From Macrostomum lignano (Eukaryota): a DNA stretch of 64,000 bases. Both the position numbers and the translations under genes were made by a program. Below are positions 5,746-25,982 of the stretch, piece by piece. The notes under the pieces were generated by a model, which was not told the origin of the DNA, made no database searches, and saw nothing but the letters and a program-made list of their open reading frames with translations. The first letter of the stretch is position 1. Each line of letters begins with the position of its first letter. The stretch lies in contig NIVC01000921.1 in NCBI GenBank assembly GCA_002269645.1, positions 186,001 through 250,000 of the forward strand, given 5' to 3'.

Positions 5746-6589
5746 CGTTGGCCGAGCGGTCACTGCACCGCATCAAGGCAAAGAAATTAACCTGCACCAA
5801 ATCTTATGACAATAGTATACAGTTTGAAACGAGCGTACACTATAAATATAATGCTTAGTATATTAGTACGAAGTAGCTATCCATCATTATCTTTGTTAAA
5901 GAGCGCGAGATGCAGAGAACAGTTTAAAAAAGTTATACAATAGGCCATTGTACTAGAAGCATTTCACTCAACGCCTATAGAAGAAGAGAAGTATTCGAAT
6001 AGTATATACCTGATGGGTGATGGTGATGATGAGGTGCTATAGTTAAAACAACAAAGCAACAGTCTGTGTACAATAGAAAGAGCACACATGCACACAACAG
6101 GCAGTACACAGAGGCTTACAGTGCAGCAGGCCGCGCTCAAGACCGGAAATAACTGGAGGAGAATCGCTAGATATGCATGCCAAGCTGGAAAGTGCGCCGC
6201 TATTTAAATAGAGATGAAGAATGGGGGAGGAGGTTGGACCAGCTTCGCCCCCAATAGCGGCAGAGAGAAGTGGAGACAGATAAATAGAGGGCGAGGGCAG
6301 CGGCAATGTACTCGGGAGTACTTCAGCTAGCCCTTCCCCGCCAGTTCTTCCAGAGCAGCATTTGCGTATACTATAAACTGTTCACTATAGCGCTCCCTCC
6401 CCACCCTGGCATCCAGGCCTCTCCGCAGGGGACGCTGCGAATACTGCAGTAGATTAAAATAATGCAGTAATAGAAAAGCAATTAATGACTGGCCTGAACT
6501 TTATAAATAAATTCTTACTGATAATCTTTTCGGTTGAGTTTCTTTTCAGTTCGTAGGAATTTAGAAAATCGAGAAAAATAGACCAATCA

Positions 6590-6815
6590 AAATATTCGCA
6601 GAAGGGCTGTGGTGCACCCTGGTGCCCATTCCACTGACGCACACATTTTTGCGTCAATTCTGTACGCGCCAATCTGTACGCACACATACACACGCTCACA
6701 CGGTGATCAGCGGCGGACAACCCCCCCCCCCCGCAGATTTTGCACACAAGCCCAAATGGTCACACACGGAATCAAACCAAGAGTCTGACGCGTTTACCAC
6801 TGAGCTGCTCAGCCC
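6590..6815 (-). mobile_element. Diverged tRNA-derived SINE (same family as 63609..63978)
   Basis: On -: A-box-like AGCTCAGTGG and B-box-like GGTTTGATTCC, followed by body motifs TGTGAGCGTGTG and CCAGGGTGCAC shared with the 63.6-kb copy. Confidence 0.6.
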
Positions 6816-6886
6816 TCAAACTTTGCATAACTGGCGCAGTCATTTTTCATGAAGATTTCCTTCATTCATGACATTCGTGAAAAGTA

Positions 6887-9468
6887 ACAGCCAGTGAGGC
6901 AGCTAGTAACAGCCAGTGAGTGAGGCAGCTAGTAACAGCCAGTGAGTGAGGCAGCTAGTAACAGCCAGTGAGTGAGGCAGCTAGTAACAGCCAGTGAGGC
7001 AGCTAGTAACAGCCAGTGAGTGAGGCAGCCAGTAACAGCCAGTGAGTGAGGCAGCTAGTAACAGCCAGTGAGTGAGGCAGCTAGTAACAGCCAGTGAGTG
7101 AGGCAGCTAGTAACAGCCAGTGAGTGAGGCAGCTAGTAACAGCCAGTGAGTGAGGCAGCTAGTAACAGCCAGTGAGTGAGGCAGCTAGTAACAGCCAGTG
7201 AGTGAGGCAGCTAGTAACAGCCAGTGAGTGAGGCAGCTAGTAACAGCCAGTGAGTGAGGCAGCTAGTAACAGCCAGTGAGTGAGGCAGCTAGTAACAGCC
7301 AGTGAGTGAGGCAGCTAGTAACAGCCAGTGAGGCAGCTAGTAACAGCCAGTGAGTGAGGCAGCTAGTAACAGCCAGTGAGTGAGGCAGCTAGTAACAGCC
7401 AGTGAGTGAGGCAGCTAGTAACAGCCAGTGAGTGAGGCAGCTAGTAACAGCCAGTGAGGCAGCTAGTAACAGCCAGTGAGTGAGGCAGCTAGTAACAGCC
7501 AGTGAGTGAGGCAGCTAGTAACAGCCAGTGAGTGAGGCAGCTAGTAACAGCCAGTGAGTGAGGCAGCTAGTAACAGCCAGTGAGGCAGCTAGTAACAGCC
7601 AGTGAGTGAGGCAGCTAGTAACAGCCAGTGAGTGAGGCAGCTAGTAACAGCCAGTGAGTGAGGCAGCTAGTAACAGCCAGTGAGGCAGCTAGTAACAGCC
7701 AGTGAGTGAGGCAGCTAGTAACAGCCAGTGAGTGAGGCAGCTAGTAACAGCCAGTGAGTGAGGCAGCTAGTAACAGCCAGTGAGTGAGGCAGCTAGTAAC
7801 AGCCAGTGAGTGAGGCAGCTAGTAACAGCCAGTGAGTGAGGCAGCTAGTAACAGCCAGTGAGGCAGCTAGTAACAGCCAGTGAGGCAGCTAGTAACAGCC
7901 AGTGAGTGAGGCAGCTAGTAACAGCCAGTGAGGCAGCTAGTAACAGCCAGTGAGTGAGGCAGCCAGTAACAGCCAGTGAGTGAGGCAGCTAGTAACAGCC
8001 AGTGAGTGAGGCAGCTAGTAACAGCCAGTGAGTGAGGCAGCTAGTAACAGCCAGTGAGTGAGGCAGCTAGTAACAGCCAGTGAGTGAGGCAGCTAGTAAC
8101 AGCCAGTGAGGCAGCTAGTAACAGCCAGTGAATGAGGCAGCCAGTAACAGCCAGTGAGTGAGGCAGCTAGTAACAGCCAGTGAGTGAGGCAGCTAGTAAC
8201 AGCCAGTGAGTGAGGCAGCTAGTAACAGCCAGTGAGTGAGGCAGCTAGTAACAGCCAGTGAGTGAGGCAGCTAGTAACAGCCAGTGAGGCAGCTAGTAAC
8301 AGCCAGTGAGGCAGCTAGTAACAGCCAGTGAGGCAGCTAGTAACAGCCAGTGAGGCAGCTAGTAACAGCCAGTGAGGCAGCCAGTAACAGCCAGTGAGGC
8401 AGCCAGTAACAGCCAGTGAGGCAGCTAGTAACAGCCAGTGAGGCAGCTAGTAACAGCCAGTGAGGCAGCCAGTAACAGCCAGTGAGGCAGCTAGTAACAG
8501 CCAGTGAGGCAGCTAGTAACAGCCAGTGAGGCAGCCAGTAACAGCCAGTGAGACAGCTAGTAACAGCCAGTGAGGCAGCCAGTAACAGCCAGTGAGGCAG
8601 CTAGTAACAGCCAGTGAGGCAGCTAGTAACAGCCAGTGAGGCAGCCAGTAACAGCCAGTGAGACAGCTAGTAACAGCCAGTGAGGCAGCCAGTAACAGCC
8701 AGTGAGGCAGCTAGTAACAGCCAGTGAGGCAGCTAGTAACAGCCAGTGAGGCAGCCAGTAACAGCCAGTGAGACAGCTAGTAACAGCCAGTGAGGCAGCT
8801 AGTAACAGCCAGTGAGGCAGCCAGTAACAGCCAGTGAGACAGCTAGTAACAGCCAGTGAGGCAGCTAGTAACAGCCAGTGAGGCAGCTAGTAACAGCCAG
8901 TGAGGCAGCTAGTAACAGCCAGTGAGGCAGCTAGTAACAGCCAGTGAGGCAGCCAGTAACAGCCAGTGAGACAGCTAGTAACAGCCAGTGAGGCAGCTAG
9001 TAACAGCCAGTGAGGCAGCTAGTAACAGCCAGTGAGGCAGCTAGTAACAGCCAGTGAGGCAGCCAGTAACAGCCAGTGAGGCAGCTAGTAACAGCCAGTG
9101 AGTGAGGCAGCTAGTAACAGCCAGTGAGACAGCTAGTAACAGCCAGTGAGGCAGCTAGTAACAGCCAGTGAGGCAGCTAGTAACAGCCAGTGAGGCAGCC
9201 AGTAACAGCCAGTGAGGCAGCTAGTAACAGCCAGTGAGTGAGGCAGCTAGTAACAGCCAGTGAGACAGCTAGTAACAGCCAGTGAGGCAGCTAGTAACAG
9301 CCAGTGAGTGAGGCAGCTAGTAACAGCCAGTGAGGCAGCCAGTAACAGCCAGTGAGGCAGCTAGTAACAGCCAGTGAGTGAGGCAGCTAGTAACAGCCAG
9401 TGAGACAGCTAGTAACAGCCAGTGAGGCAGCTAGTAACAGCCAGTGAGGCAGCTAGTAACAGCTAGTG
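6887..9468. repeat. 22/26-bp minisatellite (GTGAGGCAGCTAGTAACAGCCA[GTGA])n
   Basis: About 2.6 kb of 22- and 26-bp variants; 26-bp units dominate the left part and 22-bp units the right part. Confidence 0.98.
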
Positions 9469-10361
9469 GTAGCAGGAAGAAGTAAGCAGTGACAAAGGCG
9501 TCGGAAAAAATAGCTAAATAAATTAATAACGACTGAAGACTACGTTGACATAAAATGTAATTTCTGAAACGCCAAGAAACAAATCAGTATTGAAGATTCG
9601 AGCGCATGACTCAATTTAAATAGGCTTTATTATTCCACATTCTAGTGCAGCAGACGAATGAGTAGTATGTATGGCGCAAAAAAAATCCTGAAGCTGCTAG
9701 AATGTAACAGACTTCAGTAGAGTGAGCAAAAATTATTGTTTTCTGTATCTTTTTGAGCAACTCCCACGGACCGGTAGTTATACTGTAAAAACGTAATTAC
9801 AAATTTCAACAGACTTATTGTAGGCAATCAATTAGCAAACTCTGGTTAAGTAAAAAATTCCGTAATGTCGTAAAAAATGGCTACACTACTTACAGTAGCC
9901 AAAATACGAGTATATCTGCGTGAAAGCACTGGAAAATTGGAAGATCAGCAATTAAACAAAATATGTTAAAATGTAGCACAAATGTAGTAGAATTGGCTGG
10001 CGTTGTGACCAAGCTGTACAAGGTGGGAGGTAATATTCTCTGCAGATATGCGGCCACCAACAAATAGTACGGTTTATCTAATCAACAAATTTATGCTAAA
10101 AAATTAATAGACTAAGCGTGCAGCGATGCAGTTATTAAATACTATTGGCGTCCACATTTCACAACTGCGTGCATTCAATAAAAAATTGCGGCACAAAAAT
10201 TACAAAGGACTGTTGCCTTGGATACTGGCAGCTGATTGACACTGCGGAGCTCTCAGATACTCCTTGTAGCTGATTGAACTAATATTTATACAGTAGATAG
10301 ATAGACAGTGGGTTTGATATGCCACCTGGCATATATCATAGGTATATATATGCAGACAGAC

Positions 10362-10443
10362 ACAGATACACAAACAGATAGACAAGAAGACAGACAGACA
10401 GACAGACAGACAGACACTAAGACAGACAGACAGACAGACACTA

Positions 10444-10496
<53 letters not shown>

Positions 10497-10635
10497 GGCA
10501 GACAGACAGACAGACAGACAGACAGGCAGACACTAAGACAGACAGACAGACAGACACTAAGAGACAGACAGACAGACAGACACTAAGAGACAGACAGACA
10601 CTAAGACAGACAGACAGACAGACAGGCAGACAGGC

Positions 10636-10676
<41 letters not shown>

Positions 10677-10707
10677 CTAAGACAGACAGACAGACAGGCA
10701 GACAGGC

Positions 10708-10756
<49 letters not shown>

Positions 10757-10759
10757 CTA

Positions 10760-10799
<40 letters not shown>

Positions 10800-10839
10800 G
10801 GAAAGACAGACACTAAGACAGACAGACAGACAGACACTA

Positions 10840-10880
<41 letters not shown>

Positions 10881-10920
10881 GGCAGACAGACAGACAGACA
10901 GACAGACAGGCAGACACTAG

Positions 10921-10988
<68 letters not shown>

Positions 10989-11061
10989 CTAAGAGACAGA
11001 CAGACACTAAGACAGACAGACAGACAGACAGACAGGCAGACAGACAGACAGACAGACAGGC

Positions 11062-11110
<49 letters not shown>

Positions 11111-11113
11111 GGC

Positions 11114-11146
<33 letters not shown>

Positions 11147-11149
11147 CTA

Positions 11150-11182
<33 letters not shown>

Positions 11183-11185
11183 GGC

Positions 11186-11254
<69 letters not shown>

Positions 11255-11265
11255 GGCAGACACTA

Positions 11266-11306
<41 letters not shown>

Positions 11307-11387
11307 CTAAGAGACAGACAGACACTAAGAGACAGACAGACACTAAGACAGACAGACAGACAGACAGACAGGAAGACAGACAGACAT

Positions 11388-11422
<35 letters not shown>

Positions 11423-11451
11423 CTAAGAGACAGACAGACAGACAGACACTA

Positions 11452-11510
<59 letters not shown>

Positions 11511-11513
11511 CTA

Positions 11514-11564
<51 letters not shown>

Positions 11565-11567
11565 CTA

Positions 11568-11610
<43 letters not shown>

Positions 11611-11636
11611 CTAAGAGACAGACAGACAGACACACA
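10362..11636. repeat. (GACA)n microsatellite with interspersed CTAA/GGCA variants
   Basis: Direct inspection; source of the RQTD/LSVC ORFs. Confidence 0.98.
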
Positions 11637-11787
11637 GGTATTTCAGCGCCTGCTTCAAGCCTCGGATCGCCGTGTTCCTACGAGTAAATTAGCAATCTAG
11701 AGTTGGCATTTCGAGCCCCAGCAGAGCAGGCAGTCAGCCGAATCCGAGATAGGCGCGATCAAAAACAGCAAAACAAAGGAAGTAAAA

Positions 11788-14700
11788 TCAGGCCGAGTCG
11801 CCAAGCAGCGCCGCGATGCCCTGGCAGCAGCCGATGGCCTGCATCGCCCGCACCAGCTGCTGACAGTGCAGCGGCTGCAGCAGCTGCAGTCCCTCATACA
11901 GTAGGCCTGCCGCGGGTTGCCCCCTGGCCTGGCCGCGTTCTAGCAGCTGACGCAGCTCGCCAGGCAGCATCTCCAGCAGCAGCAGCAGCGGCTCGAAGAC
12001 CGCCTGAACAGCCGGGCAGCAGCAGAGCCGGCCGAGCTGCTCCGGTGTGACCAGCTTGTCTGGCGAGATGGACAGCTTGGCCAGATTGACGGCCATACAT
12101 GCGCAACTGCTGGCCGACCTGGCCGATCCGGCCACCGTAAATCGTGGCTGACCAGGGGTAAGTCGCAAAATTGAGTCAACCAAAAACAGAAAAACACAAG
12201 AACCAAGAAAGGCAAGAGGAAAGCGAAAGAAAGAGCAGTTCAGGGAAAATCGTGAAGCAAAAGAAAAAAAATTCGCAAAAGAAGCAAACTAAGTTGTAAA
12301 AATAATCAGGTAAGTCGCAAAAAGGATCAGGTAAGTCGCAAAAGAAGCAAACTAAGTCGCAAAAGGATCAGGTAAGTCGCAAAAGGGTTAGGTAAGTCGC
12401 AAAAAGGATTAGGTAAGTCGCAAAAAGGATTAGGTAAGTCACAAAGGGTTAGGTAAGTCGCAAAAGGGTTAGGTAAGTCGCAAAAGGGTTAGGTAAGTCG
12501 CAAAAGGATCAGCTAAGTCGCAAAAAGGATTAGGTAAGTCGCAAAAAGGATTAGGTAAGTCACAAAAAGGATTAGGTAAGTCGCAAAAAGGATTAGGTAA
12601 GTCGCAAAAAGGATTAGGTAAGTCACAAAGGGTTAGGTAAGTCGCAAAAGGATTAAGTAAGTCGCAAAAAGGATTAGGTAAGTCGCAAAAAGGATTAGGT
12701 AAGTCACAAAGGGTTAGGTAAGTCGCAAAAAGGATTAGGTAAGTCGCAAAAAGGATTAAGTAAGTCGCAAAAGGGTTAGGTAAGTCGCAAAAGGATCAGC
12801 TAAGTCGAAAAAAGGATTAAGTAAGTCGCAAAAAGGATTAGGTAAGTCGCAAAAAGGATTAGGTAAGTCACAAAGGGTTAGGTAAGTCGCAAAAGGGTTA
12901 GGTAAGTCGCAAAAGGGTTAGGTAAGTCGCAAAAGGGTTAGGTAAGTCGCAAAAGGATCAGCTAAGTCGCAAAAAGGATTAGGTAAGTCGCAAAAAGGAT
13001 TAGGTAAGTCACAAAAAGGATTAGGTAAGTCGCAAAAAGGATTAGGTAAGTCGCAAAAAGGATTAGGTAAGTCACAAAGGGTTAGGTAAGTCGCAAAAGG
13101 ATTAAGTAAGTCGCAAAAAGGATTAGGTAAGTCGCAAAAAGGATTAGGTAAGTCACAAAGGGTTAGGTAAGTCGCAAAAAGGATTAGGTAAGTCGCAAAA
13201 AGGATTAAGTAAGTCGCAAAAGGGTTAGGTAAGTCGCAAAAGGATCAGCTAAGTCGAAAAAAGGATTAAGTAAGTCGCAAAAAGGATTAGGTAAGTCGCA
13301 AAAAGGATTAGGTAAGTCACAAAGGGTTAGGTAAGTCGCAAAAGGATTAAGTAAGTCGCAAAAAGGATTAAGTAAGTCGCAAAAAGGATTAGGTAAGTCG
13401 TAAAAGGGTTAGGTAAGTCGCAAAAGGATTATGTAAGTTGCAAAAAGGATTAAGTAAGTCGCAAAAAGGATTAGGTAAGTCGCAAAAAGAAGCAACTAAG
13501 TCGCAATAAGAGGGAAGTAAGTCACAATTAGAGGCAATCAGGGGGTAGTAGGTGCAAGTGTGGCAGGAGAGCAAAAACAGAATAGAAGCCTTCAACCACA
13601 GACAAGATCTTTGAAATCAGAAGCCCGCGTCAACATTTTCCCATTGATTTCCTAAACTCTGGAGCAGGGGTTGGCAAACTCCGGCTCGCGAAGCCCCTCT
13701 ATCTGGCCCTCGCCCCTCGGGTTCTTTGAAACTTCCTAACTACGAGTAGCAAGGTTGGTGTCTCTTCAACTCTCATCTCTCTCTTCTTCTCTACCTTGCC
13801 TCCCCTCTTCTCTCTCTCCCCCTTTTCCCTCTTCTCTCTCCTCTCATTTTTACTCTCCTCTCTTCTCCCCCTTTCTCTCTACTCTTTCTCCTCAATGCCC
13901 TCTTCTCTCCTCTTATCTTCAGCAAAAATATGTGCATATTTTCTTACTTCAAAGTAGAGGGAATAGAAGATTAGAGATAAGCAAACAGAGGAGAGGCGAG
14001 CGATGCGATGGGAGAAAAGATAGAAGAGGAGAGAAAAGCTGAGGGAGGAAAAAGAGATGAGAGAGAAGAGGAGATGAGAGGAAAGAGGAAAGAAAAGATG
14101 ATGGATGAGATCAGAAGAGAGGAAAGAGGAGAGAGTAGATGAGAGAAGAGAGGATAAAGAGGAGATGAGAGGAGAGATGAGAGAGTAGAAAAGAGAGGAG
14201 AGATAAGATGAGAGAGTAGAGTGGAGAGAGACGAGAGGGAAGATAAGATGAGAGAGTAGAGTGGAATGGAGAGAGACGAGAGGAGAGATAAGAATGTAGA
14301 GAGGAGACAGAAGAGATAGGAGAGGAGAGGAAAGAGAGAAGGGATAAGGGATGAGAGAGAAAAGAAAAAGAGGATGAGAAGATTGAGGAATGGAGAGAAT
14401 TTGCAAAGGCCTCAAATCTTAGTTTAACATGCATTACTCCCATCTTTGCCTTTTTCCTAACTGTTAACAAGTTTTTGTTTGAGCATGACTTCAAATTTAG
14501 AATCTATGCAAAAATAGTTCCGGGAATTAGAATTCAGTGGTTTAAAAATCTGTGGGTTTTCACAGCTTGTATCTCTACTGGATTCGTATTCTGCATCTGA
14601 TGAGCCATCTGAATCAGGGCTCTCATCTTCCATGCCAAATCGTCTAGCAAATCGTTCTTGAGCTATAGGTCACACTGTATTCACTTCACTTACTTCTGGA

Positions 14701-16892
14701 CATTCATGAATCATGACTTTTGTAGTATGCTCACTACACTGTACTGACAATTTACTAATTGCTTCATGCCGCCACTAGATGACACTGATTAGCTGTTATA
14801 AAAACGCGGAATCTGCACGCAGCACTAATTAGCTAGCGAGGCATTTAGCTTTAAAAATATGGTCATAGTTACTCTTGCCGTTTACCTAAAGTTTTTGCTT
14901 GGCTCTTTCATAGGTAAGTCGCATTTTTTATCGAAAACTAAGTCGCACGGCCAGCGTAATTTCAGAAGTTGCGCATGTATGTTGACGGCCGTCATGGAGG
15001 CCGGGCCCAAGTCGGTGGAGGAGAACTCGGGCTCCGCAGGCTCCGGGACAGGGACAATTGAGTCCGTCTCGGTTGTCTCAAGCTCCATCTTAAGCAGCTG
15101 ACTGACGGATTCCCCGGGCAGGCAGCCGTTCCAGGCTTCGATTGCCCGATCGAACGGCGGCCGATCTGTCACCACGTATTGGGCGACATTCGCCCAGCTG
15201 GACGCTTGAGTTGCCGCCGGCCAGCGAGCTCGGATTCGGTTGCTAAGCAGGCTGGTCAACTGTTTGGAGCTGAGCTGTCTTCGCGGACAGGCCAGAGTGA
15301 AGACTTCGAAGCAAGACAGCCCGTAGGCGAGTCGATCCTGATCCAAGCAGGCCGGCTGCGGTCCAATTACGCCTGAGTCAAAGCCGCCAATCTAGTAGGG
15401 GGCAAATAGGTAAACGGCGGGAGTAATTATGAACGAGTTGCCTCGTCAGCTAATAAGTTGCTTATTGATCTTGTTTATTGAATAAAAAGGGATCAACTAT
15501 GACCAAATTGCCTAAGCTTCCACCTCATTGTCTTGTAAGTTTTATCAGTTTATCTAACAAGCAGTTAACTATTCTTCACTTAGCAGAAATTCTCACGCCT
15601 TCTCACCTTGGCCTGCAGACTGGCTGTTATTAAAATGTTTCTGGAACTAAAACTGCCGTGACAAATTGGCGGCTTCTCAACGCTGTGCAGGTGATGAAAG
15701 CCTTCGGCAATTTGGCGCAGCCAGAGCGACAGCAGAAGCGGACTCACCGGCTGGCGCTGCGAAATGGGAACAAGTTTGATTGAGCAATACTGGCCACGAA
15801 ACAGATAATAAAACCCATCTTAGATTAAAGGTAAAGCATTTTATATAAAATTTGAAATCTCGATTAGGGATTTGACATCCCGATTAAGGATTTGACATCC
15901 CGATTAAGGATTTCACATCCCGATTAAGGATTTGACATCCCGATTGAGGATTTCACATCCCGATTGAGGATTCGACCTACCGATTGAGGATTTGACATTT
16001 CGATTGGGGGAGGGGGTTGACATCCCGATTGGGGATTTGACATCTCTATTGGGGATTTGACATCCCGATGGAGGATTCGACATCCCGATGGGGATTTGAC
16101 ATCTCGATTGGGGAATTGACATCTCGATTGGGGAATTGACATCTCGATTGGGGAATTGACATCTCGATTGGGGAATTGACATCTCGGTTGGGGAATTGAC
16201 ATCTCGATTGAGGAATTGACATCTCGATTGAGGATTTGACGATGGGGGATTTGAAATCCCCATTGAGGATTTGACATTTCTATTTTGGATTTGACAACGC
16301 GATCTCAGGTTTTCGGTGCCACAATCTAAAAGCTCACAATTGTACTGTTTAAAAGTACACTCACCCGATCTGACTGAGCCAGGCTGAACTCCAAAACATT
16401 GCCATGCTCACAGTGCTCCATCACAATGCCCATCAACATGACATTTTGCTCCATATAAAAAGCCACTGAGCTGAGGAGTGCTGAGTGGTTTGCTTTAATT
16501 TTTTTCAATATATTAAACTGATTACTTATCAGCTTAGTGGCCGTTGTGCTGCAATGTTAGCAAATTGGTTTTTTATTAGAAACAAAGAATCTGAAAAGTG
16601 GAAAAATCATAAAGCTGACAGAGTCTGAGCAAGTGTCATACATCTGTACGCTTGTAGAACTAGATGTAGGCTTCATTTTCTTCAAAAAGTAGCGCTGATC
16701 AGTGGAGTCTTCCTTCCATTTGCAGCAAGCATATGAGAAGTAGCCGCTATCTGAAATGTGTAAAAAATAAAAAGTTAAAATCAACAGATACATAGATAGA
16801 CAGGTAATTCTAAAAGAAAAAGGCATACCAATAGGTGCAGGCTCTAGATCACGAAGGTTATCTTGATTGACAGTAATTTTACTTGATAGCAT
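11788..16892 (-). CDS. Pseudokinase + C-terminal death-fold protein (RIPK1-like architecture), ~391 aa, last exon interrupted by a transposon: join(16829..16892,16650..16750,16365..16517,15607..15756,14982..15391,11788..12085)
   Basis: All exons are GT-AG bounded and in phase. Kinase subdomains in order: IDSGYFSYA (Gly loop), YFLKK (beta3 Lys), FNILKKIKANH, GIVMEHCEHGNV, WLRQIAEGFHHLH...PPICHGSFSSRNIL, AK|IGGFD, DRLAYGLSCFEVFT, DRPPFDRAI. Removing the insert plus one TSD joins MTAVN-LAKL in frame to a six-helix death-domain-like tail (VFEPLLLLLEM...PAAGLLYEGL...CQQLVRAMQAIGCCQGIAALL). The exon-2 donor position is less certain. Confidence 0.78.
12305..13505. repeat. ~21-bp subterminal tandem array (GGTAAGTCGCAAAAAGGATTA)n inside the transposon
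   Basis: About 55 units. The core TAAGTCGCA also occurs singly at 12157, 14915, 14939 and in related elements. Confidence 0.95.
13665..13730 (+). mobile_element. Fragment of a second hAT-type terminus (CAGGGGTTGGCAAACTCCGGCTCGCG)
   Basis: Resembles the common CAGGGGTNGGCAAACT...CGGCCCGCG TIR of hAT/Charlie-type MITEs; no partner end found. Confidence 0.45.
13760..14400. repeat. CT-rich then GA-rich low-complexity tracts
   Basis: Polypyrimidine tract 13760-13920 and polypurine tract 13980-14400. Confidence 0.85.
14815..14886 (-). pseudogene. Degenerate 28S rRNA-like fragment (region around the R2/I-PpoI site)
   Basis: GGTAAACGGCAAGAGTAACTATGACCATATTTTTAAAGCTAAATGCCTCGCTAGCTAATTAGTG compared with conserved 28S GGTAAACGGCGGGAGTAACTATGACTCTCTTAAGGTAGCCAAATGCCTCGTCATCTAATTAGTG. 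Confidence 0.75.
15409..15455 (+). pseudogene. Second degenerate 28S rRNA-like fragment, in a pseudokinase intron
   Basis: GGTAAACGGCGGGAGTAATTATGA...TGCCTCGTCAGCTAAT; the central CTCTCTTAAGGTAGCCAAA is replaced by ACGAGT. Confidence 0.7.
15858..16300. repeat. 20-bp minisatellite (GGGATTTGACATCCCGATTG)n
   Basis: Direct periodicity; lies in the intron between pseudokinase exons 3 and 4. Confidence 0.93.
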
Positions 16893-17125
16893 GATTCATG
16901 AATTTAAAGAGATGGTGCATCAGTACAGAAACAATTAATTTAATCAATTTATTAGTTTAAATTCAGTTACTGGTTTATTTTTTCATTTTAAATATTTATC
17001 CCCTGTTACTAGCAATTTGTAAATTAGCATAATAGTAGTACTCGTACAATAGTGCAATGGTTTTATTCCTTGCCTTAGTGGCACTTATTGAACAGGTAGC
17101 ATTAAACTATGACAACTATTTTGCG

Positions 17126-17297
17126 CATGCTTGGGCGCAAACTTGGGATTCACTCGGCCGTTTCTATTGGCAACACACACATGTAAGTCGCTATTGGACG
17201 GAAAAGTAGTCACGTGACTGGTATCAGCCAATAGCGACTTACATGTGTGTGTTGCCAATAGAAACGGCCGGGTGATTCCCAAAGTTGCGCATGCATG
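17126..17297. mobile_element. 172-bp hairpin MITE of the CATACATGCGCAAC family
   Basis: Arms of about 70 bp are inverted (GGGATTCACTCGGCCGTTTCTATTGGCAACACACACATGTAAGTCGCTATTGG / CCAATAGCGACTTAC...GTGATTCCC); 8-bp TSD ATTTTGCG at 17118-17125 and 17298-17305. Confidence 0.9.
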
Positions 17298-17329
17298 ATT
17301 TTGCGGAATAACTGTATCGCTTTTAATGT

Positions 17330-18420
17330 ACAATCGCTCTCTATGTACATCGTTGACTCAGTCCTAACTCGCATAAATAAAGCGAGCACTGCCTCACGGG
17401 GCCTATGCTGATTTTTGCACTGCCAAATAGCAAGTGTTACAAGTGGTAGCAGAGATCAGAATGACAAAGGGCAGCCACCGCGCGATTCTGAGAACTTTTA
17501 GGCTCTGGCAACTTTAATGAGTGGCTGCAGCGGTTTGAGCTGTGTGCAGCAGCCAACAAGTGGACAAACGACAAACACTTGCATCTGCCAACAATTCTGG
17601 ATGGCGAGGCTCTGGTAGTCTTCTTTGAGCTTGGCGACGAGGAAAAGAGCGACTACAGTCAAGTGTGACCAAAGCATTAACGCAGTGATTAACCGAGGCA
17701 TTTCTCACTTCTCAGCGCTGGAGGCATTCGAGATCCAGAAGCTGCTGCCTGGTGAACCTCCTCGGCTGTTTCTCTACCGCCTGAGGCAGCTGCTCAAGGA
17801 CGCTGAAATCAGCAACAAGAATGCCACGGACAGCATGCTGACCCATCACTTCATTCGCGGACTGCCGGCGGATGTCAGCACTGACGCGTCAGTCAAGACG
17901 CCTGCTACTGGAGGTGCTTTCTGCCACCACGGATGAAAGCCAATCAGCCTCTCGCAGCAGCAGCCAGAACTGCTTGCGGCAGTGCTGAGACTGCAGATTT
18001 GAGGGCTATGGTCAACTTGCTGCAGGCGACAGTCCAAGACCTGGCGGCGAAGCTAAGCTCAGAGGCTTCAGACTCCTGCGTGGTTCGCAGTGCGAGGAGA
18101 CAGCACGAGGTGACCTGCTGGAATGGCAACCACTGTGGCCACATTGCCAGGAACTGCAAGCAGCCATTGGGAAATGGCACTGACCAGGGTGGAGCCCACA
18201 ACCCTGGCCAGTTCTGAGCACAGGGCCCAGCATGAGTGGATTGTTTTGGGGTGCATAGGGGGGCAGGCTGGACAGTGCTTGAGCAGCGCAGCAACTTATT
18301 CTGCATTTGCTGCAACTTTGGCAGCTAGCCGGTCCACTAGTCACATACAAACCAGCTGCACTAATGGTTAGCAGACACCAAGCAGCTCTGCTAGCAGCAA
18401 GTAGCCTACCAAGTTGCACC
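17330..18420 (+). mobile_element. Ty3/Gypsy-type LTR retrotransposon remnant (LTR end, PBS, decayed gag)
   Basis: ...TGTTACA (17441), then AG, then TGGTAGCAGAG (17444-17454, complement of the tRNA-iMet 3' end). Downstream: GNFNEWLQRFELCAAANKW...LPTILDGEAL (gag N-terminus) and a degenerate knuckle CWNGNHCGHIARNC; stops and frameshifts present. Confidence 0.8.
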
Positions 18421-18486
18421 AAAATTGTCATTTTTCCATATAGATATAATTGCCATATAGATATAAGTATTCTTGGACCTATTGGA

Positions 18487-18604
18487 AGTAAGTCGCTATT
18501 GGACAGAATAGTAGTCATGTGACTGCTCTCAGCCAATAGCGACTTACATGTGTGTGTGTTGCCAATAGAAACGACTGAGTGATTCCCAAGGTTGCGCATG
18601 TATG
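18487..18604. mobile_element. 5'-truncated copy of the 172-bp MITE
   Basis: GTAAGTCGCTATTGG...CCAATAGCGACTTACATGTGTG...GTGATTCCCAAGGTTGCGCATGTATG matches 17185-17297. Confidence 0.85.
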
Positions 18605-18989
18605 TTACAAAATGCACCTGTAATATTAAATGAATATCAACTTAAATTACCTTTTGACTATTCTTTCTTTTCTTTTACTTATTCTTTCCCCTCTTTTCTT
18701 TGCTTTCTTTTTTCCTCTCTCCCATCTTTCCCCCTTTTGTCTCTTTTTCTTTATTAATCTTTTTTTATAATTTTTATTAAATAAAATAATAAAAGCTCCA
18801 TTTCAATTACCAAGATCTGTGAAAGCAATGCCTGTTTAGGACTACCAGTTGGTTTCTAAGAAGCCTCCTTTGCAATCTAGTCTTCTTTGATAGTGGCAAA
18901 TGCTAGATAGCTTCCTTATTAGCTAATAAAGACTAAGACTTGACTTTATTTGCAGACTTGACTGCACCACGGTTCAGATAAATGCCGCC

Positions 18990-21900
18990 TCCTCCACGAG
19001 TCCACGGGGTCAAGTCGGAGAGCCGCGCTTAACTGCTGCGGCGGCCAACAGCGGCAGGACCAAGCGGGGGGCAGCGGAGCGCCCGCCGGCGTGTTGAGCG
19101 TCGACGTGAGCTTAATCGGCGAGGTCGGCTGCGTGGCGCCGCCCGCCAAGCCGCCGCCGCACTGGTCCCATCGGATCTTCTGGGTGGCGCCAGGGACCGT
19201 GAGGCCCAACTTCATCGGGCCCCAGCTGTACCACAGGGAGTACTTCGGGTCGGGACGTTCAACTGCCGGACCCTGAAAGATTCCTGGTGGAGAGGGCAGC
19301 TAGCGAAGCTAGCACTCGACCTCAGCTGCGACGGCAGGAGGTATCCATCAAGGCTGACCCGGGAATTCACTCTGAGGACCTGGGTGCTGGCTGGACCTTC
19401 TGGTACACCTCAGCTAACCACCGTGGCCGAGGAGGAGTAGGGGCGCTGATCGGGCCGAGGCTGCAGCAGAGCTGCTGCTGCGTCTCTCTGTCTGACCGGC
19501 TGCTTCGTGTCGATGTCCGGCTTCGCGGCTGGAACGCCCGCCTGTTCTGCGCGTACGCACCGCCCGCCACCCGCCCAGATGAAGCTCAGACCTTCTTTGA
19601 CTTCCTTTCGGAGCAGGTTGAAGCGACGGCACAGCGCGACACGGTGATCGTGCTCGGCGATCTCAACGCTGTGCCGCGCCGCTCCGAGCGGTCGCTCTGT
19701 CACACCACGCGAGAACGGCAACACTGGAGCGCTGGACGACTTCCTGGCCAGGCACGATCTGGTGTCAGTCAACAGCCGCTTCCGCCGGCCGCCTAGCAGG
19801 CTCGCCACCTTTGAGGGCTGCCAGCGCCGGCGACGGAACGCGCGGGGTCGGTTCGCCACGCGGAGGCTAGCACAGCGGGACCACGTGCTTGTGCGCTTTC
19901 GCGAGCGCGGCCGCGCCATCAACTGCCGCATCATCACGCCGCTGGCTCTACGCTCCGACCACCGGCTTGTCATCTGCGACCTTCATGTCCGGGACCCTCT
20001 GTACCGGCCGCCAAAGCGACTGCAGCGGCGCTACTAACGTGCGCTCAAGAACACCAAGACGCGCCGCCGCTTTGCAAACGCCTTCTGCACTGAGCTGGAG
20101 GGCGCGCGTAGCTCCGCCGAGTATGCAGCAGTCAGCGCAGCTGTCCGCACCGCCGCGGAGCAGTCGGTACCGCTGATGCGGCCAACACAGCGGGGACAAC
20201 CAGCCTGGATGGAGGATGAGGAGGTTAGACAGGCGGCAGACAACATGAAACGCATCCGGCTGAATGGCCAGCCTGCGCACGAGGCGGAGGAGGCTCTGGC
20301 GCGTGTCTACCAAGAGCAGGAGCTCGCCGCTGTCGACGACGCCATCCGAGCCGTCTCTGCTGCGGGCCCCGACGCAAGGGGCCGTGTGGCCTGGGCCACC
20401 ATCAATACCCCGACGGGACGCAAGCGGCGTGCAGCACTAAACCTGGCAGGCGACACCTCGAACGAACGCAGGAACAGCTTGCGCACGTTCTTCGCCGCCA
20501 TCGTCAACGCGCCGCCACCGACCACACTTACCAGCCGATCTGCATTTGCCGCCCGAAATACCTGTGCCAACGGCGGAGCAGTTCAACACCAGCCCAGTCA
20601 CCACTGCCGACGTTTTGAAACTTGTCTTTAATACCCCAGGCGGAAAGGCACTGGGGCCAGACGAGGTGCCAATCGAGGCGCTGCGCATCCATTGCGTGGC
20701 CACTGAGGTCACCCGTGTGATAAACGGCGTGCTCGCTGGAGGTCCGGCGCCCACTGAGTGGACCCTAGCGCACATCGTCGGCATCCCAAAGAAGCCAGGC
20801 ACAACCAAACTGGAGGAGCACCGAGGTATCTGCCTAATGTCCATCGCCGCAAAGCTTTTCAACCGGCTTCTGCTCGCCCGGCTGCAGCCCATGCTAGATC
20901 CTTACCTGCGGATCGAGCAGAACGGGTTTCGGCCAAGGCGCGGCACCGTCACGCAGATACTGGCCCTTCAGCGAGTCATCGAGGAGGCGCGCACGCGCCA
21001 GTCGAACCTGATCGTGGTATTTGTTGACTTCAAAAAGGCCTTCGACTCGGTCGCCAGAAGCGCGTTTTCCGCTGGTGCTTAGAGCGTACAACGTACCGCA
21101 GCAACTGGTCAATGCCACGATGGCGCTGTACCAAAACACCAGAGCTGCGGTGGTGACCCCAGACGGTCTCTCGGACACCTTCGATACGTCATCCGGAGTA
21201 CTCCAGAGGGACACGCTGGCGCCATTTCTGTTTGTACTGGTGCTGGACTGGGTGCTGCAGACTGCTTTGCCCACGGCCGAGGACGGCTTACTCCTGCAGC
21301 GCCGTGTGGGTCGCCGCCAACCAGAGCGCCGCCTCAGCATCTTAGGCTACGCCGACGACCTCGCCCTGCTGTCATCAACTGTCGAAGGCGCCCAACATCA
21401 GCTGGACCGGCTGGTTGGCGTTGCTGCGAGCGTCGGCCTGGTGGTCAACACGCAGAAGACCGTCGTGCTCACCACGCCATCCGACATCCAAGCCGACATC
21501 TGCTGAGGTGCCAATGGGCAGGCGATGCCGCTGCCACGCTGTCAGCAGTTTGTGTACCTTGGTGGTCTGGTGCCCGATGCCTCCGACGACCTGAGGCGTC
21601 GCCGCGGACTCGCCTGGGCAGCCTTCAACTTTGTGAGGACCGTCCTACACTCTGCGGCCCTGCCAGACCACCAGCGTTCGGCGCTGTTCCAGGCGGTGAT
21701 TGAGACCATCCTGCTTTACAACGCCAAGACATGGACGCTGACTAAGACACTTGAGCAGCAGGTGGATGTGGCCCACGCCGGCCTGCTGTGCACCACCTTT
21801 AAGATTGGCGGTGGCGAGCACATCTCCAATGCGGCGCTGTATGCCTGAGCCCACCTTGCCTACCCCAGCGACCTGCTTTGACGCCATCAGCTCTAGCTGG

Positions 21901-22040
21901 CAGGCCACCTATCCGCGCCAAGACATACTGCCCCGAGCCAGTACAGGAGACGCTGCTAAAGCTTCCAGTGCCCCTCTGGCGAGGGCAGGCGCCTACCCAG
22001 ATTGCCTACTGGCGCCCCTGACCAAGCCAATGGCCTAGCC
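18990..22040 (+). mobile_element. Decayed non-LTR retrotransposon, RTE-like (APE + RT), frameshifted
   Basis: APE motifs VGTFNCRTL (19246), GVGALIG, LFCAYAP, VLGDLNA, SDHRLV. RT motifs EWTLAHIVGIPKK, RGICLMSIAAKLFN, EQNGFRP, FVDFKKAFDSV, GVLQRDTLAPFLF, LGYADDLAL, FVYLGG. Spread over several broken frames; ends approximate. Confidence 0.9.
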
Positions 22041-22288
22041 TTCCTTCGCTCCTGCGCTCTGAGGCACACCCTGTGACACCCATTGCTGACTCTGGGGCAT
22101 AACTTCTTGTGTTGTTATTAGCTTTATTTATCTTAATTTAAGGCCTACCATCCCAACTTTAATATTCATTGATATCAAAAATGCTGTTTAAGTCCTTGAC
22201 CCCAAAGACTTACAAGCTCTCCTTGTATTGAAAGTAAAAACATTTATTTTAACTTAAAACCCTTAATTCTAATCCCAATATGCATTTA

Positions 22289-22322
<34 letters not shown>

Positions 22323-22728
22323 ATGAATACGATAATTTTATAATTAGTCACATAGCATAGTAATAAAGCCTAATGTTTTCTAAAGATATTAAAACTAAGA
22401 TGGAGATTAAAAAACTTAGATTTTAATAATTAAAATTAGATTGAGATCTTTTTTAACCATAACTAGTTTTTTTTGCCAAGGAATAGTTAAAGAGAAATTA
22501 TTAATGAGCAAATTAGAACAATAATGGCATAGTTGTAGATTGTAGATTTTGTTTAGTTAGAAAAAGTGTTCTAGTTTTTGATGTAAATCATATAATATAT
22601 AAAGATATTATATAGGGCCTAGTATCCCAACTTTTTAAATTGCATCCTAAAAATTGGATCTTTAGGTGCAAATTTGCATTTTAGTACTAGTGGAAAAAAC
22701 CTAGGCCAAGGCCAGGGCCAAGACAAAA

Positions 22729-24240
22729 TGTAACAGTGAATGGGAACAAATCAAAAGGGCTACATATTGAAAGGGCAATAGTCAAAAAGGGTGTTGGCAA
22801 GAGAAGGTATATTTATTTATTTCTGATTTAGACATTAATCTATTATTTAGTTTTTCTTTCGGCATACATTGAGGTCCAACCCTCCTTTTTGAATCATGTA
22901 GCTTGTATATGCAATTAGCACCCACCCCCTTTTATGTTAGTGCTAGTGCTATAATATATATTTGCAGTCTCAGTTGCTTGAGAGTGCACAACTGTGGTTT
23001 TTGGTTAGTTAGATTTGCATTGAGCTATAGCCGTAAAGTCAATTTGATTCTGTGAAGACTTGTTCATATTGCATGACTTGACAAGAATGCAAGAACATCT
23101 GGTAGCAGAGCATGGTTATTTACTCATTACAATCAATCAATGTTGGATGACAGAAATGAAGAGACTGCAGCGGCAGCTCTGGATATGAGCAACCAGCTGG
23201 CTCAACTAAAGGCCACAAAGGCTATTGAGAAGTGTGTCTTCACGAAGCTGCGCAACAAACTTTTGAGGACCCTAAGCTTGGATGGAGCAGAGTTGGACGA
23301 GGCCAAGCGGCTTGTGGAGCAGCTTGATCAGAGCTACAAGAAGGTGAACACTGTGATTCAAGAAGTTTTGCATGAGGTTGGAAGAAATCTGCCTGAGCAA
23401 ATGCAAGCTGTCAAGGAACTGGAGACATTGGAAAGCAATTTTGGTGAGGTAGTGAGTTTGATGACTGAGCTGAGGAAGAGGGTTTGGCAAGCAAAAGAAG
23501 AAACAGTGTGCTATGAGGAAAGAGAGATAAGGCAAAAGGAAGTTGAGGCCGCATGGAGTCAGTGGGTAGAAGTCAGAGAGCGCCAGAGAAAAATGCAAGA
23601 AGAATTTAAAGCTTAGCAGTGCGAGCTGGAGAAGGAGATGGAAAGGTTGGCAACTGTTGCAGGAGATGTTGAAGGTCATTCCATAGGGCAACTACAAGCA
23701 TAGCAAATGCAACAACAAGAGCCCAGTTGGTGCATTGCTTTGTTTGGCAGCTACCCAACTTTTGAGACCAGTGTAGGTTAGGCCTATAGGTCAGAGGGTT
23801 TTCAGCTGCGCACAGAGAGTTGGAGGTATAGGGAGAAGCCAATCAATAAAGTGAGGCAGCTACCTACCCCAACTGGAGCTGTGTACAATGCTAGCAAAGC
23901 GAGTGCTGAGCTAGGCAGGGGTCCAACAGCCCCCCAATCCCAAATGGATTATTTAGCTAACCAATCATTGCGCAGATAGCCTAGTGTGTACGGCCAAGAA
24001 TTAACTAAAAGCATTGGACAAGACATGTGGCGCTAGCTACGAGTGTCAATTCCAGTGTTTAGCAGTGACAAAAGGCAATACAAGGTTGGAAAGTGGCATT
24101 TTATGCATGTGTGAATGCATCACCCTCCTTTAATGCTTACAAATCATTATAATTGTATCAGTCCCTACAGGGAGAAGCTTTAAAACTAGTGGCCAATCTT
24201 GGCTACTCAGAGTTTGTGTACACAGCAGCACTTGAGTGGA
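22729..24240 (+). mobile_element. BEL/Pao-type LTR retrotransposon remnant (LTR, PBS, decayed gag)
   Basis: TGTAAC (22729)...AACA (23097), then TGGTAGCAGAGCATGG (23100-23115, tRNA-iMet PBS). Coiled-coil ORF LKATKAIEKCVFTKLRNKL, then DUF1759-like VSIPVFSSDKRQY..W.VAFYACV and LQGEALKLVANLGYS. Confidence 0.75.
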
Positions 24241-24973
24241 ATGCTTTTGACAATCAAAAGGGCAATAGTCAAAAGGGCAACAGGGTTAGAGCCTATTAGA
24301 CTTGTAGCGGTATTTATTTATATATTTGTACTTGTATGTATATTTGTTTAAGATACATTTTTTAAAGAATTAAAAAGCTACTTTTACTATTTTCCAAGAT
24401 AGAATTCTTGCTTGGGGGTAAGAAAACATGCGCACACATTTTTGGAGCAGCATGTAAGCACACACGCTGGCTATAAAAACGTCATAATGCTGCATTATTA
24501 ATGCAGATCATGGTGGGCCCATGCGCTAAAAAATGAAATTTCTAGTTTTTCAATTCTTATGCCGACGTAAATTAGAAAGTTGTACTTTAAGTGTAAAGTA
24601 GCTTGAACACTATAATTTTTAAAGAAAATATTCTTTAAAATTACAAGAGCTTCACTAAACTTTAAAGTAACTGTTTTTGCTAAAAACTATTCTTCTTTGT
24701 TTTACTTTTGTTTAAAATTTTCTGGCATAAAAACAACCTTCCAGACTATGAAAAGTAGGAGAACTTGAGTGCATATAGGCATATACTACATGGCACATAA
24801 CCATGTTGAATGCATGTAAAGAAATAATCTTGTTGTGTTGCTGCACATTGCTTGACGTTGACGTACAGGAGCCTCGAAGCCAGTTATATTTTTAATTCAC
24901 ACACTAATATGCTAGCAGACGGGGAGGCTATAGTATAGAATTAAACGATCATATTAGTGTTAGAAAAAAGGTA

Positions 24974-25583: not shown

Positions 25584-25661
25584 TAGTAAAGACGTATAGC
25601 GTTATCACTACGAGGCACAACATAAATAAAAATGCGTATATTGTATAATACTGATAAAATA

Positions 25662-25982
25662 TACTCAGCAGCAGTCAACTTGTATATGTTTTCTCAACAA
25701 CATTAAAAAGTCACCACCTTAGGGAGTGCGCAGTAAATTCTAGCTCATGCAGAACTGACTTTTGAGTGGGACGCAACTTGCGCCACGCGACGCAGAGTTG
25801 GGCTGGGCGAGGAGGGATTGAGAAGAGCGGAGGGCGAAGATTGGATGGATTGAAGCTTCCTCCTGGTTTTCATTGTTTTTTCAAGCATTTTTAATATCAA
25901 AATAGACGCATGATAGACGCATGGTCAAAAGATCCACTGCTCACTGGGACACAGGGTGGCGACTTTTCAATGTTGCTGAGTA
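25662..25982. mobile_element. Tc1-family MITE adjacent to the previous element
   Basis: TA-flanked TACTCAGCA...AAAAGTCACCACC and its inverted copy GGGTGGCGACTTTTCAATGTTGCTGAGTA. Confidence 0.7.

What the first reader, a model, noticed from the sequence alone, without database searches (positions are those of the whole stretch)
12086..14989. Exon-inserted DNA transposon with phase-matched splice sites: possible intronisation rescuing the pseudokinase gene
Seen on -: the host frame reads 32 codons into the element to TTT AG|GTAAAC (donor at 14885, phase 2). Near the far end, GGCCAGCAG|T TGC GCA TGT ATG (acceptor at 12107, phase 2) rejoins the death-domain frame. Splicing 14885 to 12107 would give a full-length protein with about 39 extra residues in the kinase-DD linker. 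Known: maize Ds elements can be spliced from exons using terminal sites. Inference: new intron formation, or a switch between truncated (kinase only, stop at 14882) and full-length isoforms. The acceptor has a weak pyrimidine tract, as do several genuine acceptors in this window.
Basis: partly seen in the sequence, partly recalled or inferred. Interest (0 to 1): 0.75.

Follow-up and report, generated by a model that had tools for sequence, protein, structure and literature searches.

The report
Transposon insertion breaking one flatworm gene copy
A 2.9-kb cut-and-paste transposon has recently landed in the last coding exon of one of several near-identical copies of a pseudokinase gene in the flatworm Macrostomum lignano; the idea that it is spliced out as a new intron rests on a coincidence expected by chance, so this is an ordinary insertion allele.

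Summary
Window 12094-14981 is a 2888-bp non-autonomous DNA transposon. It has exact 15-bp terminal inverted repeats (19 nt at 95%) and a perfect 8-bp target-site duplication (TTGACGGC). It sits in the last coding exon of the minus-strand gene BOX15_Mlig006697g1 of Macrostomum lignano (contig NIVC01000921.1). A paralogous copy on NIVC01000677.1, 99.6% identical in the exons, has the uninterrupted site.

The intronisation reading is not supported:
- 8 of the 15 possible GT/AG pairs restore the frame, so the phase match is chance-level.
- The acceptor is poorer in pyrimidines than all four genuine acceptors of the gene and ranks 64th of 120 AGs in the element.
- The acceptor AG is absent from a second family copy in the window.
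- The hypothetical intron would be 2779 nt, against 78-608 nt for the real ones.

The deposited "full-length" protein for this locus needs a 2896-nt gap with non-canonical ends. That fits a transcript from the empty-site paralogue mapped across the insertion. No RNA data could be examined. The likeliest outcome is a truncated or null copy buffered by intact paralogues. The "death domain" label could not be confirmed.

The parts
12094..14981 (-). Non-autonomous TIR DNA transposon (2888 bp, 41% G+C against 64% in the flanking exon). Strand is given as host-gene orientation. No transposase ORF.
12086..12093 (.). Target-site duplication copy, TTGACGGC (+ strand)
   Evidence: single copy in paralogue L002
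14982..14989 (.). Target-site duplication copy, TTGACGGC (+ strand)
12094..12112 (+). Terminal inverted repeat CATACATGCGCAACTGCTG. It contains the proposed acceptor CAG (A 12108, G 12107 on the - strand).
14963..14981 (-). Terminal inverted repeat CATACATGCGCAACTTCTG
12310..13510 (.). About 58 tandem copies of a 21-bp unit GTAAGTCGCAAAAAGGATTAG (higher-order periods 245/449 bp). The core TAAGTCGC also occurs near both termini, in the second copy and in the MITE, so it is a presumed transposase-binding motif (inference).
13760..14365 (.). GA/CT-rich low-complexity block. On the - strand it is a ~400-nt polypyrimidine tract ending in CAG, with first exon base 14038. This is the strongest acceptor-like site in the element.
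14882..14884 (-). First in-frame stop (TAA) after 32 element-encoded codons. It is the predicted end of the truncated product.
14884..14885 (-). It matches the consensus at 6 of 9 positions and lacks the G at +5 that all four real donors have.
12107..12108 (-). Pyrimidine fraction 0.40.
14982..15391 (-). Upstream part of the interrupted last coding exon of BOX15_Mlig006697g1 (real acceptor ...CTACTAG|ATT at 15391)
11788..12085 (-). Downstream part of the interrupted exon, through the stop codon. It encodes the helix-rich C-terminal domain.
15392..16889 (-). Remaining annotated part of the gene: four exons and four GT-AG introns of 78, 93, 608 and 215 nt.
42335..48075 (+). Second, 5741-bp copy of the same family (TSD CTTTTAAA/CCTTTAAA). 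Only the terminal ~80-166 bp are shared. GGTAAAC is kept; the acceptor AG in the TIR is absent.
17126..17297 (.). 172-bp MITE with related termini (CATGCATGCGCAAC), a TAAGTCGC motif pair and an exact 8-bp TSD ATTTTGCG. A partial second copy lies at 18488-18604.

Best explanation
A non-autonomous cut-and-paste DNA transposon with an 8-bp target-site duplication (hAT-like or P-like; superfamily unresolved) recently inserted into the last coding exon of one subgenome copy of a TKL-type (MLKL/RIPK-like) pseudokinase gene in the neopolyploid flatworm Macrostomum lignano.

Shown: the element, its TIRs and TSD, the in-frame empty site in a 99.6%-identical paralogue, and the stop 32 codons into the element.

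Inferred: transcripts of this copy read into the element. They encode a protein that lacks the C-terminal ~100 residues and carries a 32-residue element-derived tail, or they are unstable or silenced. The loss is tolerated because at least one intact paralogue remains. The deposited full-length protein for this locus is an annotation artefact. A transcript from the empty-site paralogue was aligned to this locus and the element became a 2896-nt pseudo-intron. The phase-matched GT and AG are chance features, not an evolved or efficient splice pair.
For: Locus: the window is 100% identical to NIVC01000921.1 of assembly GCA_002269645.1.

Element: TIR and TSD. Empty site in L002 on NIVC01000677.1, with the same downstream MFS_1 neighbour. 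The gene copies differ at 5 of 1216 exon and 1 of 989 intron positions. Stop after 32 codons.

Annotation artefact: the deposited protein PAA74822.1 carries this locus's own alleles but skips exactly element plus one TSD. All 11 placements of that 2896-nt gap have non-canonical ends. The annotators mapped de novo transcripts with BLAT at minId 0.8 and kept hits within 1% of the best (PMC5730564). The species has three subgenomes with ~98% local identity, and 93% of read pairs multi-map (PMC10733133).

Splice sites: 8/15 site pairs are in frame. Acceptor pyrimidine fraction is 0.40 against 0.5-0.8 for the real ones, rank 64/120, with a 0.95 competitor at 14038. The hypothetical intron is 2779 nt against 78-608 nt. 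The acceptor AG is missing in the second family copy.

Other models: an older gene model (P0005) reads straight into the element. No protein in the collection has the predicted splice junction or other element peptides.
Against: No RNA data were examined, so the fate of this copy's transcripts is inferred. The donor TAG|GTAAAC is as close to the generic consensus (6/9) as two of the gene's real donors (5/9), and it is conserved in the second copy. Only four genuine introns were available as a yardstick, and splice-site strength was judged by crude measures. The exon coordinates of the deposited model could not be read directly; they were deduced from its protein.
Confidence: 0.8

Rival explanations
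1. One reading: the element is removed as a new spliceosomal intron from donor 14885 to acceptor 12107. This gives a full-length protein with 39 extra residues, constitutively or as one of two isoforms.
For: The join is in frame and open. The donor AG|GTAA is consensus-like (6/9), removes the stop codon it overlaps, and is conserved in the second copy. Maize Ds/dSpm exon insertions are known to be spliced from sites in their ends (own knowledge). M. lignano introns average ~1.1-1.4 kb genome-wide.
Against: The phase match is chance-level (8/15 pairs). The acceptor is weaker than all four real acceptors and is outranked by 63 other AGs, including a very strong one at 14038 that the donor would meet first. 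The acceptor AG is absent in the second copy. The donor lacks the +5 G found in all four real donors. No database protein carries the junction. The intact paralogue removes any need for rescue.
Confidence: 0.06
2. Leaky cryptic splicing through other site pairs. For example, donors at 14948, 14938 or 14885 joined to the better acceptors at 12147 or 12288, or to internal acceptors such as 14038. The result would be a mixture of mostly aberrant and a few in-frame mRNAs.
For: Eight in-frame combinations exist. Acceptors 12147 and 12288 have pyrimidine fractions of 0.70 and 0.65, within the range of real sites. There are 11 GTs with at least 6/9 consensus matches on the - strand between 15391 and 12094.
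Against: No RNA evidence either way. The only in-frame donor for 12147 or 12288 (14938) matches the consensus at 2/9.
Confidence: 0.1
3. The 2896-nt gap in the deposited model is real. The element plus one TSD would be removed precisely, by footprint-free somatic excision or by a non-spliceosomal RNA process guided by the paired termini.
For: The deposited protein for this locus skips exactly element plus one TSD.
Against: The empty-site paralogue, 99.6% identical, and the permissive transcript mapping explain the model fully. Excision of transposons with 8-bp TSDs normally leaves footprints (own knowledge). No such RNA process is known in flatworms.
Confidence: 0.02
4. Assembly artefact: the element was mis-joined into the exon by the assembler.
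For: The genome is repeat-rich and hard to assemble.
Against: A perfect 8-bp TSD next to perfect TIR ends is the signature of transposition, not of a mis-join. A gene model from the older ML2 assembly also reads from the exon into the same element end (P0005), although both assemblies share the same PacBio data.
Confidence: 0.02

Closest known systems
Non-autonomous hAT-type (or P-type) TIR transposons with 8-bp target-site duplications and subterminal repeats
   Same: 8-bp TSD in three family members. Short TIRs of 15-19 bp. A repeated subterminal motif (TAAGTCGC) near both ends. No transposase ORF. Presence/absence polymorphism between paralogous loci.
   Different: The termini begin CATAC, not the hAT-typical YARNG (own knowledge of the consensus). 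No autonomous partner or transposase was found, so the superfamily is unresolved. The subterminal motif has expanded into a ~1.2-kb, 58-copy array.
Maize Ds / dSpm / Mu exon-insertion alleles spliced from pre-mRNA through sites in the element ends (Wessler and others, late 1980s; own knowledge)
   Same: An exon insertion of a non-autonomous DNA transposon with a GT near one end and an AG near the other that would restore the frame.
   Different: In maize the spliced transcripts were observed. Here there is no RNA evidence, the acceptor is poor, stronger competing acceptors exist, and the frame match is at chance level.
Introners: transposon families that create introns on insertion (PMC9860276)
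   Same: A TIR/TSD DNA element inside a coding sequence. Some introner families add a few codons to the mRNA.
   Different: Introners are short (median 30-654 nt) and multi-copy as introns, and they carry or co-opt splice sites at the element/TSD boundary. This element is 2888 bp. Its candidate sites lie 97 nt and 13 nt inside the ends, and the acceptor is not a family feature. None of the other three copies seen lies in a known intron.
Mis-annotated 'introns' caused by transcripts of a paralogue or allele aligned across an insertion polymorphism
   Same: The deposited CDS skips exactly element plus one TSD with non-canonical ends. A 99.6%-identical empty-site paralogue exists. The annotation pipeline kept near-best BLAT hits.
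   Different: Nothing differs in kind. The exon table of the deposited record itself could not be read with these tools.

Membership tests
Class II TIR DNA transposon (cut-and-paste), non-autonomous | Terminal inverted repeats at both ends | tested here: met
   15/15 exact, 19 nt at 95%. The motif occurs 6 times in the window against 0.2 expected.
Class II TIR DNA transposon (cut-and-paste), non-autonomous | Target-site duplication flanking the element, single copy at an empty site | tested here: met
   TTGACGGC 8/8. Paralogue L002 has one copy and no element.
Class II TIR DNA transposon (cut-and-paste), non-autonomous | No intact transposase gene | tested here: met
   No long ORF. The only 58-aa ORF has no Pfam hit. 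The interior is tandem and low-complexity repeats.
hAT superfamily | 8-bp target-site duplication | tested here: met
   Three family members: 8/8, 7/8 and 8/8.
hAT superfamily | Termini matching YARNG | tested here: not met
   Termini are CATAC / CATGC. The consensus is from own knowledge.
hAT superfamily | Mobilised by a transposase with BED/RNase-H/hAT-dimerisation domains | not testable with these tools
   No autonomous copy in the window. The 5.7-kb copy has no Pfam-recognisable transposase. The rest of the genome was not available.
Introner / transposon-derived spliceosomal intron | Canonical splice sites at or within a few bases of the element/TSD boundary, so that the element is the intron | tested here: not met
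   All 11 precise-removal placements are non-canonical. The candidate GT lies 97 nt and the AG 13 nt inside the ends.
Introner / transposon-derived spliceosomal intron | Splice signals shared by family copies | tested here: not met
   GGTAAAC is shared, but the acceptor AG is absent in copy 42335-48075 (CAACAATTGG).
Introner / transposon-derived spliceosomal intron | Many copies that are introns of genes | tested here: inconclusive
   Only four members were visible (window only), none in a known intron. The genome-wide census was not possible.
Introner / transposon-derived spliceosomal intron | Removal from mRNA demonstrated | not testable with these tools
   No RNA-seq access. No protein with the predicted junction is in the collection.
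Protein-kinase-like pseudokinase (TKL group, MLKL/RIPK-like) | Kinase fold recognisable by profile | tested here: met
   PF07714 at E = 6e-11. Best PDB matches are MLKL pseudokinase, RTKC8 and RIPK2.
Protein-kinase-like pseudokinase (TKL group, MLKL/RIPK-like) | Catalytic residues replaced | tested here: met
   HRD is replaced by HGS and DFG by GFD in the alignment to the RTKC8 kinase.
Death domain (C-terminal region of the host protein) | Match to death-fold profiles or structures | tested here: not met
   No Pfam hit at E<=1. No death-domain chain among PDB sequence hits at E<=10. No homologue outside the species in 1.84 billion representatives.
Death domain (C-terminal region of the host protein) | Six-helix bundle fold | tested here: inconclusive
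   The AF2 single-sequence models are helical but have mean pLDDT of 37 and 49, too low for a fold search.

The most novel reading that the evidence does not exclude
The insertion is caught at the first step of intron birth in an animal. In one subgenome copy of a neopolyploid flatworm, a 2.9-kb TIR transposon in an exon would be removed, at least in part of the transcripts, through a GT and an AG in its own ends. The product would be a full-length protein with a 39-residue linker insertion, while redundancy from the intact paralogues lets the allele persist.
Probability: 0.06. Interest if true: 0.6.

Novelty: new member of a known kind. Interest (0 to 1): 0.2.

Why it matters
As it stands, this is a routine insertion polymorphism between near-identical gene copies of a recent polyploid.

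Its practical value is a curation warning. The deposited protein PAA74822.1 presents the interrupted copy as intact, because a paralogue's transcript was aligned across the transposon. Similar pseudo-introns with non-canonical ends are likely elsewhere in this annotation.

It also defines a small, apparently recently active family in M. lignano. The family has 8-bp target-site duplications and CATACATGCGCAAC termini, and includes a 172-bp MITE. It could serve as a marker for telling subgenomes apart. Only if junction reads from this copy were found would it become an interesting case of nascent intron gain in an animal.

Tried and rejected
- Death-domain test: Pfam, PDB sequence search at E<=10 and an exhaustive HMMER search of 1.84 billion representatives found nothing outside M. 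lignano. Two single-sequence AlphaFold2 runs had mean pLDDT of 37 and 49. I did not run a fold search, because its matches would be meaningless.
- Transposase search in the 5.7-kb second copy: no long ORFs. A fragment that recalled a MULE transposase motif ([16 protein letters not shown], about 43700-44020) had no Pfam support, so the Mutator idea was dropped. Two Pfam calls with raw frames failed on stop codons.
- Proxy for RNA evidence: a search of 5.8 billion protein clusters with the element-derived read-in and tail peptides found nothing. Cluster members of the host protein show only empty-site forms and one read-in form.
- A bacterial promoter/terminator scan is irrelevant to a eukaryote and should be ignored.
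- Rfam and tRNA scans of the whole window found nothing.
- No AATAAA or ATTAAA lies on the - strand inside the element. Premature polyadenylation at a canonical signal is therefore not supported.


Full report
**Where the window comes from.** A protein search with the joined flanking exons returned Macrostomum lignano proteins at 97% identity. The contig that encodes the best hit (PAA74822.1, BOX15_Mlig006697g1; NIVC01000921.1 of assembly GCA_002269645.1, Mlig_3_7) is 100% identical to window 26889..1788 over 25,102 bases. The window is therefore flatworm nuclear DNA. The host gene occupies window 16889..11788 on the minus strand.

**The observation.** The element is real.
- Inverted repeats lie at 12094-12112 and 14963-14981. 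They are 19 nt at 95% complementarity, and the outer 15 nt (CATACATGCGCAACT) are identical.
- They are flanked by a perfect 8-bp direct repeat, TTGACGGC, at 12086-12093 and 14982-14989.
- The terminal motif occurs six times in the window against 0.2 expected by chance.
- The interior has no transposase. It holds about 58 tandem copies of a 21-bp unit (12310-13510), a GA/CT-rich low-complexity block (13760-14365) and short unique stretches without Pfam matches.
- G+C is 41%, against 64% in the flanking exon.
- Deleting the element and one repeat copy restores a single open frame...GPASMTAVNLAKLSISPDKL....

**The empty site exists.** The protein cluster holds a second Mlig_3_7 protein, PAA78578.1. 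Its locus (L002, NIVC01000677.1) has the same downstream MFS_1 neighbour and a gene span of 2231 bp instead of 5102 bp. L002 aligns to both flanks of the element and carries a single GCCGTCAA with no element. Across the gene the two copies differ at 5 of 1216 exon positions and 1 of 989 aligned intron positions. They are very recent duplicates. This fits the three subgenomes of the DV1 line, which have about 98% local identity (PMC10733133). The perfect TIR ends and TSD, and the near-identity of the copies, indicate a recent insertion.

**The family.** Three further members lie in the window.
- A 5741-bp copy at 42335-48075 has the TSD CTTTTAAA/CCTTTAAA. It shares only its terminal ~80-166 bp with the exon-inserted element.
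- A 172-bp MITE at 17126-17297 has an exact 8-bp TSD, ATTTTGCG.
- A partial MITE lies at 18488-18604.

All share CATRCATGCGCAAC-type termini and the motif TAAGTCGC near the ends. An 8-bp TSD with short TIRs and subterminal repeats points to hAT, or less likely P. The termini do not fit the hAT YARNG consensus (own knowledge) and no autonomous partner was found, so I leave the superfamily open.

**The host gene.** The annotated part has four GT-AG introns of 78, 93, 608 and 215 nt. The kinase-like region matches PF07714 (E = 6e-11). Among solved structures it is closest to the MLKL pseudokinase, RTKC8 and RIPK2. In the alignment to the active RTKC8 kinase, HRD is replaced by HGS and DFG by GFD, so 'pseudokinase' is justified.

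'Death domain' is not. The C-terminal 101-110 residues have no Pfam hit at E<=1 and no death-domain chain among PDB sequence hits at E<=10. They have no homologue outside M. lignano in an exhaustive search of 1.84 billion representatives. Single-sequence AlphaFold2 models are helical but far too uncertain for a fold search (mean pLDDT 37 and 49). The region is best called an orphan helical C-terminal domain.

The host frame continues for 32 codons into the element (IHAQLLKLRWPCDLVFDKKCDLPMKEPSKNFR) to TAA at 14884-14882. The GT of TAG|GTAAAC starts at 14885. CAG|T ends at 12107. Joining them is in frame and adds 36 element residues plus 3 duplicated residues.

**Is this more than chance? No.**
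- Frame match. Before the stop there are three GTs. In the 65 codons that stay open in the downstream frame at the far end there are five AGs. Of the 15 pairs, 8 are in frame and free of stops. A phase-matched pair was therefore to be expected.
- Acceptor strength. The proposed acceptor has 40% pyrimidines in the 20 nt upstream, against 50-80% for the four real acceptors of this gene. It ranks 64th among the 120 AGs downstream of the donor. A far better site follows a ~400-nt CT-rich tract, with first exon base 14038 and 95% pyrimidines.
- Donor strength. The donor matches the generic consensus at 6 of 9 positions. That is comparable to the two weaker real donors (5/9), but it lacks the +5 G that all four real donors have. 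It is one of 11 equally good or better GTs on that strand between 15391 and 12094.
- Intron length. The hypothetical intron would be 2779 nt, 4.6 to 36 times the length of the real ones.
- Family conservation. In the second family copy GGTAAAC is kept, but the terminal AG is missing (CAACAATTGG), so the acceptor is not a family feature.

**What the databases say about transcripts.** The deposited protein for this very locus (PAA74822.1) reads ...MTAVNLAKLS..., as if the element were absent, yet it carries this locus's own alleles (LEPAPI, GIAALL). That requires a 2896-nt gap. All 11 placements that reproduce the protein begin and end with non-canonical dinucleotides; none is GT-AG, GC-AG or AT-AC. 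So the gap is not a spliceosomal intron.

The annotation paper explains it. De novo transcripts were mapped to the genome with BLAT at minId 0.8, hits within 1% of the best were kept, and the result was merged with StringTie models (PMC5730564). A transcript from the empty-site paralogue, 99.6% identical, would map here with the element as a gap.

An older gene model (UniRef A0A1I8HF26, from the ML2 assembly) reads from the exon straight into the element (...AVNIHAQLLKLRW). The two assemblies share their PacBio data, so this is only weak independent support for the insertion. No member of the protein clusters has the predicted 39-residue insertion. A search with the element-derived peptides found nothing in 5.8 billion clusters.

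**Most likely mechanism.** Shown: the insertion, the stop after 32 codons and the intact paralogue. Inferred: transcripts of this copy run into the element. They either encode a protein without the C-terminal domain or are lost. The copy is effectively a null or truncation allele, buffered by its paralogue(s). This copy also has a private ~3.2-kb retroelement insertion about 2 kb upstream (18925-22105, 9-bp TSD TTATTAGCT) that L002 lacks. That fits a copy accumulating insertions under redundancy.

**Comparison with known systems.** Introners are short, multi-copy as introns, and carry or co-opt splice sites at the element/TSD boundary. This element fails those tests where they could be made. 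It is an ordinary non-autonomous TIR transposon insertion. The nearest match for the 'full-length' model is a known kind of annotation artefact.

**Verdict.** This is a new member of a known kind, and interest is low (0.2). The decisive test is a read-level look at the public RNA-seq, with the three diagnostic junction sequences phased by the five copy-specific SNPs.

Noticed in passing
window 12310-13510, + strand: On the + strand (antisense to the host gene) the 21-bp tandem unit reads AG|GTAAGT. The element has 41 sites matching the 5' splice-site consensus at 8/9 and 3 sites at 9/9. Inserted the other way round in a gene, the element would present dozens of near-perfect donors.
   Followed up: partly
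window 18925-22105: A GC-rich retroelement (endonuclease/RT-like ORFs on the + strand, YADD motif) flanked by a 9-bp duplication, TTATTAGCT. It is absent from the paralogous locus L002 and lies about 2 kb upstream of the annotated start of the same gene copy.
   Followed up: partly
window 42335-48075: A 5741-bp second copy of the transposon family (TSD CTTTTAAA/CCTTTAAA) whose interior is unrelated to the first copy. It contains a ~110-aa ORF fragment (about 43700-44020, +) with a motif reminiscent of MULE transposases, but no Pfam hit.
   Followed up: partly
window 17126-17297 and 18488-18604: A 172-bp MITE with related termini and an exact 8-bp TSD, ATTTTGCG, plus a partial second copy 1305 bp away. 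Both lie within the stretch (window 18924..14982) that aligns to paralogue L002 at 96%.
   Followed up: partly
protein P0005 (UniRef A0A1I8HF26) versus window 16841: The older ML2-assembly model that reads into the element carries Ala in LEAAPI, as the empty-site paralogue does. The window copy has Pro (LEPAPI). Either a third copy also carries the insertion or the older consensus is a mosaic. Unexplained.
   Followed up: no
window 11788-12093 (- strand), C-terminal 101 residues of the host protein: An orphan domain with no homologue outside M. lignano among 1.84 billion representative proteins and no Pfam family.
   Followed up: yes
window about 10290-11640: A long (CTGT)n-type microsatellite starts about 150 bp downstream of the gene's stop codon. 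It is seen as endless SVCLSVCL translations.
   Followed up: no
window 6883-9468, 4027-5207 and 2242-3599: Large tandem-repeat arrays, seen as ladders of self-matches offset by about 22-26, 44-48 and 20 bp, between the pseudokinase gene and the neighbouring MFS_1 gene and within that gene's span.
   Followed up: no
deposited annotation of NIVC01000921.1 (gene BOX15_Mlig006697g1): The CDS of PAA74822.1 must contain a 2896-nt 'intron' with non-canonical ends that equals transposon plus one TSD. This is a likely systematic artefact wherever subgenome copies differ by an insertion.
   Followed up: yes
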